Sequence record: LC727699.1
Direction: 5' to 3' (one strand)
Length of the DNA: 64,000 nucleotides
Part shown: piece after piece, positions 25,178-29,080 of the stretch
How the letters are laid out: every line of letters starts with the position of its first letter
How positions within the stretch are numbered: the stretch's first letter is position 1
Notes under the pieces: model-generated
Databases searched by the model: none
The model's input: only the letters and a program-made list of their open reading frames with translations
What the model was told of the DNA's origin: nothing
Translations under genes and position numbers: made by a program

Positions 25178-27094
25178 ATGTCTAATGAACAACAGGTTAC
25201 AAATAAGAAAAAGATTAAGGGCATTGAAGCCAAACATATTACTTATTGTACTGATCAATTTGGTAAGTTTACAGATGCGCATTTCGTTAAAGAACGAATT
25301 CATTTTGAAGATGGTACAACTGCAAATAATTTAAGGATGTGGGAAAACTACCAGCGTCCTTTTTGGATTACCTCAAAAGGAATGCGTAACCATAAAGAAA
25401 AGAAAGATTACGAATATGAGCGTAACTTAGTTAAATACATGTCAACTCAAATTGACATGAAACGTAAGATTAGTAAAATCCTAGGTGACTATTCGGCTAG
25501 ATCTCTTCGTCAACTAGCGCGTAGTCCTTACCTATATGGCAGTGATGTTAGTTCAACCTGTTATCTGAAGCATGATTATCAAGAACGTTATCCTGGTCTA
25601 ATCTCTCTAAACACTGTTGCTGGCGGTGACATCGAGACCAACGTTTATGAAGCTGAGAACGATGGTCAGATTATCTGTATGTCAGTTACACATAAGAACA
25701 AAGCTTTCTTAGCCTATTTAAAACGATGGGTTAGTGATATTGAAGATCCAGTGAAAGAGACATTAGAACAAGCACAAAAAGAAGAGGTATTATCACATCT
25801 AATTAAAGAACGTGGTCTAGATATTGAAGTAATGGTTGTTGAAACACCAGTAGATATTATTATTGAATGTTTTAAACGACTACATACCTGGAAACCAGAT
25901 TTCTTCGCATTCTGGAATATTAGCTTCGACATTGGTAGAATCTTAAAAACATTAGAACACTATGGTGTTAATCCAGCTGATGTTTTTTCTGATCCATCGG
26001 TACCTAAGAATTATAGGTATTTCCATTTTAAGATTGATGAACCTATGACCACCACTGCATCTGGGGTCACTAAATCTAAAGGACCGGAGGATCAATGGCA
26101 TTGGATTACAGCACCCTCTAGTTTTCAATGTATCGATTCTATGTCAACTTATCGAGTAACTCGATTAGCTAAAGGACGTGATCCTAACTATCGGTTAGAG
26201 TCTATTCTTAGAAAAGAACTAAACATCGATAAATCCACGACCATTAAAAATGATAAGGACTTAGAAGATTTTATTGAAGGTTTTAATAAACAACTAGTTG
26301 ACCGACCAGGCGGCGTTATTACTAAATATATTAAAAATGTAGGTAGTAATGAATGGGTACCGGTGGATGATTTTATATTAAATGATAACTTTACCTATGG
26401 TGATTCTATTAGATATGTAATGGAATTTGGTAAGTTAACCTTTAAAGAAACTGCACATCTTGGTGGTATCGATTGGCACCGTGAGATGCAGACTAAGCAT
26501 AAAATCAAATATGGTCTTTATAACATCATCGACTCCATTCGACTAGAACAACTTGATGAACAAGTAAATGACCTTGGTCGCTCTATAAGTCTATTCTCTA
26601 AGGCATCTGACTATAAGAACTTTAGTTCTAACCCAAAACGACTATGTGACGATATGCACTTCTGGTATTTGAATAGACCAGAGCCATGTGTCATTGGTTC
26701 AAGTTCAGATCAGATGGTGCATGAACTTGATCAATATGTTATTGGCCATAATGATTGGATTGTTACACTACCATCATACATGGCAGGTCCAAATGGATTG
26801 CAGTGTGTTAAAGATTTACCGAATTATAAAACCTTAATCTTCTGTCATATCGCCGACCTTGACATCGTGTCGACATATCCTAACGTTAGTCAGATTCTAA
26901 ATATTGCACGTGAAACATGTGTGATGGAATTCTCAATGATGGAAGGAATTAGTGAACACCATCGCCGTGAAGTTGGCGTAAACTTAACAGGTGGTAGGGT
27001 TAATGCTATTGAAATCACACAGAAGATCATGGGTGCTCCTAAAATGGACACCCTGCTAGAGAAGTTTATTAATACCTATAAGAACCCAAAGTAA
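25178..27094 (+). CDS. Family B DNA polymerase N-terminal fragment: 3'-5' exonuclease plus palm motif A (gp82 homolog)
   Basis: ExoI GDIETN, ExoII WNISFDI, ExoIII YNIID, motif A DLDIVSTYPN; no motif B or YGDTDS motif C. Confidence 0.8.
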   Translation: MSNEQQVTNKKKIKGIEAKHITYCTDQFGKFTDAHFVKERIHFEDGTTANNLRMWENYQRPFWITSKGMRNHKEKKDYEYERNLVKYMSTQIDMKRKISKILGDYSARSLRQLARSPYLYGSDVSSTCYLKHDYQERYPGLISLNTVAGGDIETNVYEAENDGQIICMSVTHKNKAFLAYLKRWVSDIEDPVKETLEQAQKEEVLSHLIKERGLDIEVMVVETPVDIIIECFKRLHTWKPDFFAFWNISFDIGRILKTLEHYGVNPADVFSDPSVPKNYRYFHFKIDEPMTTTASGVTKSKGPEDQWHWITAPSSFQCIDSMSTYRVTRLAKGRDPNYRLESILRKELNIDKSTTIKNDKDLEDFIEGFNKQLVDRPGGVITKYIKNVGSNEWVPVDDFILNDNFTYGDSIRYVMEFGKLTFKETAHLGGIDWHREMQTKHKIKYGLYNIIDSIRLEQLDEQVNDLGRSISLFSKASDYKNFSSNPKRLCDDMHFWYLNRPEPCVIGSSSDQMVHELDQYVIGHNDWIVTLPSYMAGPNGLQCVKDLPNYKTLIFCHIADLDIVSTYPNVSQILNIARETCVMEFSMMEGISEHHRREVGVNLTGGRVNAIEITQKIMGAPKMDTLLEKFINTYKNPK

Positions 27095-27462
27095 TATATC
27101 AGTGGAAGCGCCGAGGAGGATATGAATGTTCATCTGTTGGTGACAAAAGATTCTCGGCTCTTTACGCAAGGCTTCCTGATGGCAGAACAATTGAGGAAGC
27201 TTGGCAGTTAGATTGTAAAGGATATCGCATATACTCCAACCATTGGAAAGCTGGTAAAGGAAAACCACCACTAGACGGGTATAATCCCAAATATGATGAT
27301 TATAAAAATCTGTGGAAAGTATGGGCGGTATCTAATAAACATCTAATGGATGAATTGCGTCAGAATGCAAAAGAACATGATAACTATCTTTCTGATGTTT
27401 TTGCTTCTACTGATATTTCACAGGCACGTGCTCTAGCAGAACTACTTAATGAAGGATATTAA
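27094..27462 (+). CDS. Unannotated 122-codon frame without ATG start, NADAR-like motif pattern
   Basis: IYQWKRRGGYECSSVGDKRFSALYARLPDGRTIEEAWQLDCKGY...KGKPP...STDISQARALAELLNEGY*; open from 27082; missed by the ORF track. Confidence 0.7.
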   Translation: MYQWKRRGGYECSSVGDKRFSALYARLPDGRTIEEAWQLDCKGYRIYSNHWKAGKGKPPLDGYNPKYDDYKNLWKVWAVSNKHLMDELRQNAKEHDNYLSDVFASTDISQARALAELLNEGY

Positions 27463-27530
27463 AAAATGGAAGGTATTCCTAATTAAATATTATCAATTGA
27501 TCATTACTGCTAACATAAACTTCGACACAT

Positions 27531-27560
27531 CATAAAACCCTCCCATTACGGGAGGGTTTA
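27531..27560. terminator. Bidirectional hairpin AACCCTCCC-ATTAC-GGGAGGGTT
   Basis: Between convergent genes; CATAA on the 5' side. Confidence 0.7.
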
Positions 27561-27565
27561 TTTCG

Positions 27566-29080
27566 TTAACTAATTTGGTATTTTAAATTCTGATTACCGT
27601 TTAGAACATAAATCTTACCGTCATTATTAAACGTATTGGCAAAACCTGCATCCACTAAACCAGTTTCTAAATTACCTAAATTTATCCATCGTGCTAATCG
27701 TGGTTCATAATACTTAATTGGTGCGTTATTTTGATTTTCACCAGCGATTACATAAAGTTCACCAGATGGGCGTATATTAATAGCTGCACCAAGAGGTATA
27801 CCTGTAGTTATTGGTTTGGACCAATTATTGTTGGTTTGATTGTACGATATGATTCCAGTGTTAACACCAGCACCAACCGTACCACCAATAACGCATACGC
27901 TATTATTATAAATACTCACTGAATAATCTTGGGTATATTCCCCAGTATCATTAAATGCTGCACCACTGGTATATGTATCTGTAGTTGGATTGTACATTAA
28001 TGTAAATCCACGATTATTTGTCGCAGTTGTATCAGCTGCACCTAATATGTAGATTAACCCATTAAGACTAGTTCCACGTGCATACCGGCAAGCTATCGTG
28101 CCTGGTGATTTTATTTCCCATGTATTAGTTGCAGGATCATAACACTGCATATCTTTAGTAAGTACACCATCTGTGGCACTTTCACCACCATAGAAATATA
28201 CTTTACCATTAAATGCAACAGCCGAGCATTGTTTAACTGCTATAGGCGTACCAGTTGGTTGTAATGTTGTTAACTTACCCGTGACTAAATTCAGTGTACG
28301 TAGAGCAGTATTAGCATTATTCTTACCACCGTAATAATAGACTAAGTTACCTATTTGGGCACCTGCTGCCATTTCGTTATCAGTTTCAAAATCAGTAAGT
28401 TTAATAACATTATCTTTAACGAATGGATATGTACCACTAGCATAAACCACTGGACGCCAACCTTGGGTTGCAGCACCCGTTTCACTACTTGACGAGCTAG
28501 TTATATCAATCGCATAGTAGCCACGATAGAGCTGGTCATTAACTGGATCACTACCTGGGTCTCTTCCCCAGTTAGTAGTACCATCAGTGCTAATACCACC
28601 AGCGACCGCTTGGTTAATACCTAAGTCATTATCTGTAAATTTATAAGGCCAGTTAGCACCATTTAAATTAGATACGTGAACATTATAAAGTAACCTTTGC
28701 CATTCTGATGTGGCACCAGCCATTGTTAATAAACCAAATTTATAAATGTTCCCCATAAATCTAACTTCATAGTCACCATTACGGAGTCCGGCATTATTAA
28801 GCCGTGATTTTTGTATTGATTTACGAGCTGGTTTCTTTGGTATGTAACAAGTAACATTTTTATTAGAGAACTTTAACCATGGTTGTCCATCATTGATTAC
28901 TGTTCCAAATGTCATATTAACTAATTTAGCTGCATCATCATAACCAAATAATTCTGAAGATGTTGTTTCACCATACAAACCTAATTCCCTTGTCCCAGCT
29001 ATCAGTGTTTTAGGACCTGGATAAGGATCGGAATATATAGGCGTATTTGTTAGTCCAGAAGACAACAATAACTCAAACAT
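27566..29080 (-). CDS. Virion (tail-associated) protein: phiKZ paralog-family N-terminal domain plus six-blade Kelch beta-propeller
   Basis: N-terminal MFELLL...GPKTLIAG...GLYGE...WLKF; Kelch blades VYYYGG, VYFYGG, IYILGA, VCVIGG, LYVIAG, IYVLNG. Confidence 0.75.
   Translation of the reverse strand: MFELLLSSGLTNTPIYSDPYPGPKTLIAGTRELGLYGETTSSELFGYDDAAKLVNMTFGTVINDGQPWLKFSNKNVTCYIPKKPARKSIQKSRLNNAGLRNGDYEVRFMGNIYKFGLLTMAGATSEWQRLLYNVHVSNLNGANWPYKFTDNDLGINQAVAGGISTDGTTNWGRDPGSDPVNDQLYRGYYAIDITSSSSSETGAATQGWRPVVYASGTYPFVKDNVIKLTDFETDNEMAAGAQIGNLVYYYGGKNNANTALRTLNLVTGKLTTLQPTGTPIAVKQCSAVAFNGKVYFYGGESATDGVLTKDMQCYDPATNTWEIKSPGTIACRYARGTSLNGLIYILGAADTTATNNRGFTLMYNPTTDTYTSGAAFNDTGEYTQDYSVSIYNNSVCVIGGTVGAGVNTGIISYNQTNNNWSKPITTGIPLGAAINIRPSGELYVIAGENQNNAPIKYYEPRLARWINLGNLETGLVDAGFANTFNNDGKIYVLNGNQNLKYQIS

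What the first reader, a model, noticed from the sequence alone, without database searches (positions are those of the whole stretch)
27082..27462. Hidden start-less ORF reached by C CCA AAG -1 slip at the polymerase-fragment stop, or by an ATA start
Seen: the PolB fragment ends AAC CCA AAG TAA, i.e. heptamer C CCA AAG (27085-27091) directly before the stop. The -1 frame is open from 27082 to TAA 27462 and has no canonical start for about 90 codons. Established: X XXA AAG heptamers (lambda G GGA AAG, dnaX A AAA AAG) are shift-prone in bacteria. Inference: either a polymerase-subunit fusion (...YKNPK-VIYQWKRRGGYECSS...) or a rare ATA start overlapping the stop (TAATA instead of TAATG). A point mutation or sequencing error is a third option.
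Basis: partly seen in the sequence, partly recalled or inferred. Interest (0 to 1): 0.75.

Follow-up and report, generated by a model that had tools for sequence, protein, structure and literature searches.

The report
Frameshift extension of phiKZ DNA polymerase
In phiKZ-type giant phages the DNA polymerase gene ends in a conserved slippery sequence that most likely makes some ribosomes slip back one base and add a 123-residue conserved domain of unknown function, a product that no genome record annotates.

Summary
The window is a phiKZ-type jumbo phage. The polymerase gene (phiKZ gp082 homologue, 25178-27094) ends AAC CCA AAG TAA. The -1 frame is open from 27082 to 27462 and has no ATG, GTG or TTG before 27346.

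The hidden ORF is a real, widespread phage protein family (phrog_9995, at least 500 homologues), under purifying selection.

In 16 diverged relatives the polymerase ends NNC CCA AAG, followed by a stop (one codon later in four). The domain always lies in the -1 frame. The heptamer is invariant at synonymous sites (about 6e-15 by codon usage).

The codon where free-standing homologues start is ATG or GTG in some relatives, ATA here, and GAA, ACA, ACT, GTT or GTA in others. Those last codons cannot plausibly start translation, yet the ORFs are intact.

Relatives with the domain in the +1 frame have GTG or TTG starts and no heptamer. Two metagenomic relatives encode polymerase and domain as one in-frame protein.

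The best explanation is a -1 programmed frameshift at C CCA AAG, next to a stop codon, giving a 761-aa polymerase-domain fusion. Weak ATA initiation may add a little free protein. Sequencing error is excluded and decay is very unlikely. I found no report of this. No product has been observed.

The parts
25178..27094 (+). DNA polymerase gene (homologue of phiKZ gp082, a diverged family-B-type polymerase protein), 638 aa, ending ...YKNPK, stop TAA
   Evidence: ORF list. Annotated 'DNA polymerase' in identical GenBank records. Homologues are described as T4/RB69-like in 201phi2-1 and DT01 records. No Pfam or PDB sequence hit.
27085..27091 (+). Slippery heptamer C CCA AAG in X XXY YYZ register of the polymerase frame
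   Evidence: Present at 16 diverged polymerase-domain junctions, each time after a codon ending in C. Joint codon-usage probability about 6e-15 over 10 lineages. It was the most efficient heptamer measured in E. coli (PMC4066793).
27092..27094 (+). 0-frame stop codon TAA directly after the heptamer ('shifty stop' arrangement)
   Evidence: A stop is adjacent in 12 relatives and one codon later in the 201phi2-1 group.
27091..27462 (+). -1 frame extension: 123 codons (VIYQWKRRGGYECSSVGDKRFSAL...LNEGY) plus stop TAA at 27460-27462; the conserved domain called 'X' here, family phrog_9995
   Evidence: Translation. phrog_9995 at E 1.6e-55. At least 500 homologues. AlphaFold2 pLDDT 97. Purifying selection among start-less relatives.
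27094..27096 (+). ATA codon at the position where free-standing homologues and some relatives have ATG or GTG; possible weak start, more likely an ordinary Ile codon of the fusion
   Evidence: That codon is ATG, GTG, ATA, GTA, GAA, ACA, ACT or GTT in close relatives.
27113..27128 (+). Shine-Dalgarno-like GAGGAGG (codons for Arg-Gly-Gly) followed by two ATGs (27122, 27126), both outside the domain frame. Together with the stop-bounded stretch they explain the spurious 29-aa ORF 27122-27211 annotated in some records.
   Evidence: The out-of-frame ORFs are 29 and 5 codons here and differ in length in relatives.
27346..27462 (+). Annotated 'PHIKZ082.1' (38 aa): in fact the C-terminal third of the X domain, called from the first in-frame ATG
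   Evidence: It matches phrog_33573, a 38-aa family that is this fragment.
27535..27559 (+). Intrinsic-terminator-like hairpin ending the polymerase-X transcription unit, facing the convergent gene 27566-29080 (-)
   Evidence: ORF list.

Best explanation
A fraction of ribosomes translating the polymerase mRNA shift to the -1 frame at C CCA AAG (27085-27091). The tRNAs for Pro and Lys re-pair from CCA AAG to CCC AAA. The slow step that allows this is probably the stop codon lying directly after the heptamer. Those ribosomes then read GTA ATA TAT ... to the TAA at 27460. The result is a 761-aa protein: the whole 638-aa polymerase protein plus a 123-residue C-terminal domain (X). Ribosomes that do not shift terminate and give the 638-aa protein. 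X is a compact, widespread phage domain of unknown function. In this clade it is delivered mainly, and in many members only, as a polymerase fusion.

Shown: the anatomy, its conservation, the absence of any start codon in several relatives, selection on the start-less part, and natural in-frame fusions.

Inferred: that the shift happens, its efficiency, and the role of the stop codon.
For: (1) The heptamer is in the correct register and the -1 frame is open through a conserved domain.
(2) Sixteen diverged junctions were compared (GenBank phiPA3, 201phi2-1, Viktualia, PS119XW, Phabio, and 10 metagenomic lineages). All have NNC CCA AAG, followed by a stop (one codon later in the 201phi2-1 group), with X in the -1 frame. 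The polymerase tail upstream is not conserved.
(3) The synonymous choices C / CCA / AAG are invariant. The joint probability from each lineage's own codon usage is about 6e-15 for 10 lineages, most of whose synonymous sites are saturated where tested.
(4) No ATG, GTG or TTG lies upstream of the conserved N-terminus in the window, Phabio, L016/17, L018/19, L020-22, L023, L024 or L025. The start-position codon is GAA, ACA, ACT, GTT or GTA in six of these lineages.
(5) These start-less ORFs are intact and selected. dN/dS is 0.06-0.31 where it can be computed. In the first 22 codons, window versus L025 has 15.0 of 15.7 synonymous sites changed against 4.0 of 50.3 non-synonymous sites.
(6) ATG and non-start codons alternate between sister taxa (window ATA / phiPA3 ATG; L016 GAA / L026 ATG), so the codon is not held as a start.
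(7) Natural controls. D6, Psa21 and RVTF4 have X in the +1 frame with GTG or TTG starts and lack the heptamer. EL, DT01 and Xoo-sp14 lack both X and the heptamer.
(8) Natural in-frame fusions. P0226 (698 aa) aligns to polymerase residues 47-621 at E 4e-39, with X at 561-676, on a contig next to a phiKZ-type capsid gene. P0217 has the polymerase C-terminus at 53% identity followed by X.
(9) Noxifer lacks CCCAAAG and any nearby start, but has A AAA AAG in the polymerase frame 37 nt before the stop, with the -1 frame open into X.
(10) C_CC.A_AA.G is the most efficient -1 heptamer measured in E. coli (PMC4066793; PMC5009743).
Against: No product has been observed; all evidence is comparative. No conserved downstream hairpin or pseudoknot was found (alignment fold -2.9 kcal/mol, covariation about 0; single-sequence z-score -1.8). 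No upstream Shine-Dalgarno-like stimulator is visible. Without stimulators, heptamers in E. coli gave only about 2-10 times a background of about 0.05%, so efficiency could be low. Some relatives do have ATG or GTG at the X start, and most homologues elsewhere are free-standing proteins, so X can work unfused. Whether the Pseudomonas host's Lys-tRNA set favours slippage on AAG was not checked. The lineages share ancestry, so the probability in (3) is only an approximation.
Confidence: 0.75

Rival explanations
1. X is made as a free protein from the ATA codon (27094-27096), which overlaps the polymerase stop (TAATA in place of TAATG). This would happen by weak near-cognate initiation or by termination-reinitiation coupling. 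The heptamer would be irrelevant.
For: ATA sits exactly where phiPA3 and L026 have ATG (TAATG), where 201phi2-1, Viktualia, D6 and L028 have GTG, and where most free-standing homologues have their Met. ATA recurs in L018 and PS119XW. Near-cognate starts work at low level in bacteria (own knowledge).
Against: No Shine-Dalgarno sequence lies upstream of ATA. Close relatives carry GAA, ACA, ACT, GTT or GTA at this codon with intact, selected ORFs, so initiation here cannot be the shared mechanism. This reading does not explain the synonymous-site invariance of C CCA AAG or the in-frame fusions. PS119XW has a GTG one codon upstream, so its ATA need not be a start.
Confidence: 0.12
2. X is a recently inactivated gene in phiKZ (ATG to ATA), now an untranslated remnant. 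The open frame and the heptamer are leftovers.
For: The sister phage phiPA3 has ATG at this codon. All phiKZ-type isolates are about 99% identical, so little time may have passed for decay. Genome annotators found no gene here, only fragments.
Against: At least seven other lineages lack a start, are diverged to synonymous saturation, and still keep the full ORF and its N-terminal 22 codons under purifying selection. The window's X has every invariant family residue and folds with pLDDT 97. No stop or indel occurs in any of about 47 isolates.
Confidence: 0.04
3. X is reached by another non-standard route. Examples are initiation at the strong GAGGAGG site on one of the out-of-frame ATGs (27122 or 27126) followed by an immediate frame change, or transcript-level slippage or editing that fuses the frames.
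For: GAGGAGG with ATG 6 nt downstream is a near-ideal ribosome-binding site. The GGAGG-ATG pair recurs in many relatives because it encodes Arg-Gly-Gly-Tyr-Glu-Cys. RNA over the 3' part of X is about 18 times more abundant than over the polymerase gene in published phiKZ RNA-seq.
Against: The conserved residues YxWKRxGG lie upstream of these ATGs and are under selection, so translation must begin before them. Lineages with Tyr-Asp-Gly/Ala instead of Arg-Gly-Gly have no GGAGG. No homopolymer run long enough for polymerase slippage is present. The RNA excess is also seen for another 3'-terminal mini-ORF (072.1 versus 072), so it looks like a general 3'-fragment effect.
Confidence: 0.05

Closest known systems
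E. coli copA -1 programmed frameshift
   Same: Uses the same C CCA AAG heptamer (this rests on my own recollection; the papers I read name the copA frameshift and its pseudoknot but not its slippery sequence). Two products come from one mRNA in a bacterial translation system.
   Different: In copA the shift leads quickly to a stop and gives a shorter protein, and it is driven by a downstream pseudoknot. Here the shift bypasses the stop to add a 123-residue domain, and no conserved structure was found.
Phage lambda G/GT tail-assembly chaperone frameshift (G GGA AAG) and its counterparts in other tailed phages
   Same: A -1 shift on an X XXA AAG heptamer near the end of the upstream gene gives a C-terminally extended fusion in fixed ratio with the short form. 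The arrangement is conserved by position across very diverged phages and was first recognised by comparative genomics.
   Different: The gene class differs: a replication enzyme rather than a tail chaperone. Here the extension is an independently folding domain that also exists as a free gene in other phages, and some relatives can probably make it both ways.
dnaX tau/gamma of E. coli (A AAA AAG)
   Same: A -1 frameshift in a replication gene gives two replisome proteins that differ at the C-terminus. Noxifer's candidate site is this same heptamer.
   Different: In dnaX the frameshift truncates the protein, and it uses an upstream Shine-Dalgarno-like element plus a downstream hairpin (own knowledge). 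Here the frameshift product is the longer one, and neither stimulator was seen.
IS3/IS911-family OrfA-OrfB transposase frameshift
   Same: Two overlapping ORFs, the second in the -1 frame and often without its own start, are fused on an A AAA AAG type heptamer. Frameshifting sets a low level of the fusion protein (PMC4066793).
   Different: That is a mobile-element transposase with a well-defined pseudoknot or hairpin stimulator. Here the slip site abuts the stop codon of the first ORF.
'Shifty stop' frameshifting (slippery run followed directly by a stop codon; Weiss et al. 1987, cited from memory)
   Same: The heptamer is directly followed by UAA, UAG or UGA in 12 lineages, which fits a stop-stimulated slip.
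   Different: The original cases were synthetic or low-level. Use of this arrangement as a conserved natural signal in a phage core gene has not, to my knowledge, been described.

Membership tests
Bacterial -1 programmed ribosomal frameshift site (X XXY YYZ type) | Slippery heptamer in the register of the upstream frame | tested here: met
   C CCA AAG at 27085-27091, with 0-frame codons CCA AAG. It is the top-ranked heptamer in E. coli.
Bacterial -1 programmed ribosomal frameshift site (X XXY YYZ type) | The -1 frame is open from the site and encodes a conserved, selected polypeptide that lacks its own start | tested here: met
Bacterial -1 programmed ribosomal frameshift site (X XXY YYZ type) | The heptamer is conserved across diverged relatives beyond what the encoded amino acids require | tested here: met
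   16 of 16 junctions with X in the -1 frame and CCCAAAG have NNC CCA AAG; about 6e-15 by codon usage. The heptamer is absent from relatives with X in the +1 frame or without X.
Bacterial -1 programmed ribosomal frameshift site (X XXY YYZ type) | A stimulatory element (downstream hairpin or pseudoknot 5-9 nt away, or upstream Shine-Dalgarno-like sequence) | tested here: not met
   No conserved structure and no upstream Shine-Dalgarno-like sequence. An adjacent 0-frame stop codon is conserved and may play this role. Stimulators are common but not obligatory.
Bacterial -1 programmed ribosomal frameshift site (X XXY YYZ type) | The trans-frame protein is actually produced | not testable with these tools
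   Needs mass spectrometry, western blot, ribosome profiling or a reporter assay. No paper found reports it.
Gene with a non-canonical (AUA) start codon | A near-cognate codon, preceded by a ribosome-binding site, is conserved at the start position | tested here: not met
   ATA is present in the window, but relatives have GAA, ACA, ACT, GTT or GTA there. There is no Shine-Dalgarno sequence upstream.
phrog_9995 (phage protein family of unknown function) | Full-length match to the family profile | tested here: met
   E 1.6e-55, residues 2-122 on profile positions 2-123 of 124.
NADAR / DUF4326 (YbiA-like) superfamily, considered for the X domain | Significant sequence or profile match | tested here: not met
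   No Pfam hit for any of 55 members, even at E of 10. hhalign of the family profile against E. coli YbiA gives probability 0.2%.
NADAR / DUF4326 (YbiA-like) superfamily, considered for the X domain | Shared fold | tested here: inconclusive
   Foldseek gives repeated but weak hits to NADAR and DUF4326 proteins. BFVD: E 0.27-7, TM 0.33-0.55, probability at most 0.6. PDB 8bau: TM 0.43, probability 0.08.
Family B DNA polymerase (upstream gene) | Match to polymerase or exonuclease profiles or to solved structures | tested here: inconclusive
   No Pfam or PDB sequence hit. The assignment rests on the database annotations of homologues and on a DLDxxSTYPxV stretch that resembles motif A (read by eye).

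The most novel reading that the evidence does not exclude
The polymerase-X fusion is an obligatory replisome component of nucleus-forming Pseudomonas jumbo phages. X would be a minimal NADAR-like enzyme or other DNA-damage or modification-reversing or counter-defence module, tethered to the polymerase by recoding so that it travels with the replication fork inside the phage nucleus. The same module would be delivered in other phages as a free early protein or inside giant multi-domain (possibly injected) proteins.
Probability: 0.12. Interest if true: 0.85.

Novelty: new member of a known kind. Interest (0 to 1): 0.68.

Why it matters
phiKZ is the reference model for nucleus-forming jumbo phages, and gp082 is one of its core replication genes. 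Antisense knock-down of gp082 scores among the top hits of a published screen (PMC12571901).

If the frameshift is real, every public phiKZ-type genome misannotates this locus, listing nothing or two spurious mini-ORFs. The phage would then make two forms of its polymerase protein, one carrying a widespread uncharacterised phage domain.

This gives a concrete handle on the function of a family with hundreds of members (phrog_9995). The family also occurs in N4-like phages and inside proteins of 2,000-6,000 residues.

It would also add a rare natural case of -1 frameshifting that seems to rely on a heptamer plus an adjacent stop codon rather than on an RNA structure. The claim can be tested directly with existing phiKZ proteomics or ribosome-profiling data.

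Tried and rejected
- **Sequencing error.** Rejected: the stretch is identical in about 47 isolates.
- **Downstream RNA stimulator.** Single-sequence folding (z-score -1.8) and alignment folding of 12 lineages (-2.9 kcal/mol, no covariation) gave nothing convincing. The GGAGGA...TCCTCC hairpin seen in some lineages starts about 22 nt after the heptamer and is not conserved.
- **Function of X.** Pfam gave no hit, even at E of 10 over 55 members. A PDB profile search gave only noise, uL3 at E 0.007. Foldseek against PDB gave nothing significant. Foldseek against BFVD gave only family members plus weak NADAR/DUF4326 hits. hhalign against E. coli YbiA was not significant. Pfam on four giant X-containing proteins and ten mid-size ones gave only one unrelated DUF488 hit.
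- **Literature.** Searches for phiKZ + frameshift + polymerase, jumbo phage + programmed frameshifting, PHIKZ082 and PHIKZ082.1 found no report of this recoding.
- **Transcription start and end tables.** The supplements for phiKZ and 201phi2-1 are not held, so I could not check for an internal promoter.
- **Relatives of Noxifer.** None is in GenBank phages, so the A AAA AAG site could not be tested for conservation.
- **P0238.** This 838-aa protein with a C-terminal X is not a polymerase fusion.
- **tRNA genes.** The window has none.
Full report
**What is there**

The window is a phiKZ-type jumbo phage. The region 26500-27700 is 100% identical to Pseudomonas phages PA7, SL2 and many others, and 48 records match.

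The ORF 25178..27094 (638 aa) is the homologue of phiKZ gp082, annotated 'DNA polymerase'. It ends AAG AAC CCA AAG TAA. The heptamer C CCA AAG therefore lies at 27085-27091, in X XXY YYZ register, directly before the stop at 27092-27094.

The -1 frame is open from 27082 to the TAA at 27460-27462 and reads EPKVIYQWKRRGGYECSSVGDKRFSAL...LNEGY. It has no ATG, GTG or TTG before the ATG at 27346.

GenBank records either leave this stretch empty or annotate two fragments. One is a 29-aa ORF at 27122-27211 in a different frame. The other is a 38-aa ORF at 27346-27462, named PHIKZ082.1 in phiKZ.

**The hidden ORF is a real protein domain**

From 27094 the translation matches phrog_9995 over its whole length (E 1.6e-55).

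It has at least 500 homologues in the large protein collection, most of them 120-130 aa free-standing proteins. It has 554 representatives at 50% clustering.

In an alignment of 55 members, 26 columns are invariant. Many members start M-[YF]-x-W exactly at the residue encoded by ATA 27094-27096.

AlphaFold2 with that alignment gives a compact alpha/beta domain, mean pLDDT 97.2.

tblastn finds the domain in phiPA3 (88%), 201phi2-1 (68%), the PS119XW group, Phabio, D6, Psa21 and Noxifer. It also finds it in unrelated phages: N4-like Achromobacter and Delftia phages, Sphingomonas PAU and others.

**How relatives are built**

I read the junction in 9 GenBank jumbo phages and in metagenomic contigs fetched through proteins that gene callers had truncated or called in full. 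I then analysed all junctions together.

- In 16 distinct junctions the polymerase ends NNC CCA AAG followed by a stop. In the 201phi2-1 group one sense codon comes first.
- X lies in the -1 frame, and that frame is open from the heptamer.
- The polymerase tail before Pro-Lys is not conserved. The preceding codon encodes Asn, Pro, Ser, Ala, Leu, Thr, Asp or Val, yet it always ends in C.
- The codon just before the conserved Tyr of X, where free-standing homologues have Met, varies widely:
  - ATG in phiPA3 and L026/27
  - GTG in 201phi2-1, Viktualia, L028-32
  - ATA in the window, phiKZ, L018/19 and PS119XW (PS119XW has a GTG one codon upstream)
  - GTA in Phabio
  - GAA in L016/17 and L025
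  - ACA in L020-22
  - ACT in L023
  - GTT in L024
- In the window, Phabio, L016-L025 and Noxifer there is no canonical start anywhere between the upstream stop of that frame and the conserved N-terminus. Noxifer's only candidates lie 115 or more codons upstream.

**These start-less ORFs are not decaying**

Between start-less lineages, synonymous sites are mostly saturated while dN is 0.13-0.48. dN/dS is 0.06-0.31 where it can be computed.

The first 22 codons are the part that would be lost if translation began at the first in-frame ATG. They show the same pattern: window versus L025 has 15.0 of 15.7 synonymous sites changed against 4.0 of 50.3 non-synonymous sites.

On a tree of X, start and non-start codons alternate between sister taxa inside a clade with 100/100 support (window ATA with phiPA3 ATG; L016 GAA with L026 ATG). 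That codon is therefore drifting as an ordinary residue (Met, Ile, Thr, Glu, Val). It is not held as an initiator.

**The heptamer is held at the nucleotide level**

Assume the amino acids x-Pro-Lys are fixed. Using each lineage's own codon usage, the chance that ten lineages all use NNC-CCA-AAG is about 6e-15. The lineages share ancestry, so this is approximate, but synonymous sites are saturated in most pairs for which this was computed.

CCCAAAG occurs nowhere else in the 64-kb window, against 4.8 expected.

**Natural controls**

- D6, Psa21 and RVTF4 carry X in the +1 frame, overlapping the polymerase end. They have GTG or TTG starts and no heptamer.
- EL, pPa_SNUABM_DT01 and Xoo-sp14 have no X downstream. 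Their polymerase genes end differently, and in EL and DT01 the stop is followed by palindromic, terminator-like sequence.
- Noxifer has neither CCCAAAG nor a nearby start. It does have A AAA AAG in the polymerase frame (L011 553-559, 37 nt before the stop), with the -1 frame open into X. This is a single case with no close relative to test.

**Natural in-frame fusions**

The exhaustive representative search returned two proteins in which polymerase and X are one ORF.

- **P0226** (698 aa). Residues 29-531 align to polymerase residues 47-621 (E 4e-39 and 1e-10). X lies at 561-676, with 50% identity to the window's X. The gene sits next to a phiKZ-type major capsid gene (PF25620) on its contig.
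- **P0217** (236 aa). It runs from the motif-A-like DLDVRSTYPSV stretch through the polymerase C-terminus (53% identity to residues 550-630) straight into X.

These fusions show that polymerase-X as a single polypeptide is a form that selection accepts.

**Mechanism**

The best explanation is a -1 programmed frameshift at C CCA AAG. Pro- and Lys-tRNAs re-pair to CCC AAA and decoding continues with GTA ATA TAT. The product has 638 + 123 = 761 residues.

C_CC.A_AA.G was the most efficient of all 64 heptamers in E. coli, reaching 54% with a strong pseudoknot (PMC4066793). A review also lists it as highly shift-prone (PMC5009743).

I found no conserved downstream structure and no upstream Shine-Dalgarno-like element. 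The only conserved neighbour is the 0-frame stop codon. This suggests a 'shifty stop' arrangement in which slow termination gives time for the slip; that idea comes from my own knowledge and is an inference.

Without a stimulator the efficiency may be low, so the fusion may be a minor species. Nothing here measures it.

**The rivals**

- **ATA initiation.** This remains possible as an additional, minor source of free X in phiKZ, because the position is right. It cannot be the shared route, given GAA, ACA, ACT, GTT and GTA in close relatives and the lack of a ribosome-binding site.
- **A dead gene.** This is very unlikely.
- **The strong GAGGAGG + ATG signals at 27113-27128.** They are by-products of the Arg-Gly-Gly-Tyr-Glu-Cys codons. 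They lie downstream of conserved, selected residues and are absent from the Tyr-Asp-Gly lineages.

**Function of X**

The function is unknown. There is no Pfam or PDB sequence match.

Foldseek gives only weak, though repeated, similarity to NADAR and DUF4326 proteins. A profile comparison with E. coli YbiA is not significant. I treat NADAR-likeness as a lead only.

X also occurs inside many proteins of 2,000-6,000 residues that have no Pfam domains. It also occurs as an early-region gene in N4-like phages. It is therefore a mobile module used in several delivery formats.

**Novelty**

No paper in the searchable library links phiKZ gp082, or any jumbo-phage polymerase, to recoding. Recent functional work treats gp082 simply as 'DNA polymerase'.

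The mechanism is classical, so I rate this as a new member of a known kind. It is conserved across a clade, lies in a core replication gene of a model phage, and is missing from all annotations.

**Limits**

All evidence is comparative; no protein was observed. Transcript 5'-end maps could not be consulted. The host Lys-tRNA repertoire was not examined. Frameshift efficiency is unknown.

Noticed in passing
L004 (phiPA3, HQ630627.1 73340-74914), polymerase gene upstream of the junction: The phiPA3 polymerase reading frame is open for only 255 nt before its stop. The annotated gene 085 ends about 570 nt upstream of X. tblastn covers 217 polymerase residues in two pieces spread over 995 nt, about 340 nt more than needed. 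This suggests an intron or other insertion in the phiPA3 polymerase gene. P0217, a 236-aa polymerase-tail-plus-X protein, starts at about the same place.
   Followed up: partly
window 27346-27462 (phiKZ 80128-80244, PHIKZ082.1): In the RNA-seq table of PMC12571901 (supplementary file 7), normalised RNA over PHIKZ082.1 is about 8-18 times that over PHIKZ082 (14,826 versus 832 in the first sample) and varies in parallel with it. PHIKZ072.1 versus PHIKZ072 shows a similar excess. This looks like stable 3'-end fragments next to terminators, but an internal promoter was not excluded.
   Followed up: partly
Proteins P0126, P0130, P0131, P0134, P0138, P0141, P0196 and others: The X domain (55-62% identical) is embedded in dozens of metagenomic proteins of 2,000-6,146 residues. 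The four tested have no Pfam domain at all. Their nature was not determined; they may be giant phage or mobile-element multi-domain proteins.
   Followed up: partly
L011 553-559 (Noxifer, NC_041994.1): A classical A AAA AAG heptamer lies in the polymerase frame 37 nt before the stop, and the -1 frame is open for 131 codons into a start-less X. This may be an independent solution to the same fusion. No close relative is available to test conservation.
   Followed up: partly
L005, L008, L031, L032 (201phi2-1 group), between the polymerase stop and the GTG of X: The 14-nt 'intergenic' spacer TAAGCCCAAGTATT is identical in all four phages, although the flanking coding sequence varies. This is expected if the spacer is translated in the -1 frame (Ser-Pro-Ser-Ile) as part of a fusion.
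   Followed up: no
window 27122-27211 and equivalent positions in GenBank records (e.g. PP456878.1, OQ992561.1): A 29-aa 'hypothetical protein' annotated in several phiKZ-type genomes is an out-of-frame artefact lying inside the X coding region. It is created by the GAGGAGG-ATG pair that encodes Arg-Gly-Gly-Tyr-Glu.
   Followed up: yes
PMC12571901, main text: Knock-down of phiKZ gp082 induced the Pf4 prophage locus of PAO1. The antisense oligomers target the gp082 start and would also remove any polymerase-X fusion, so that phenotype cannot be assigned to one form.
   Followed up: no
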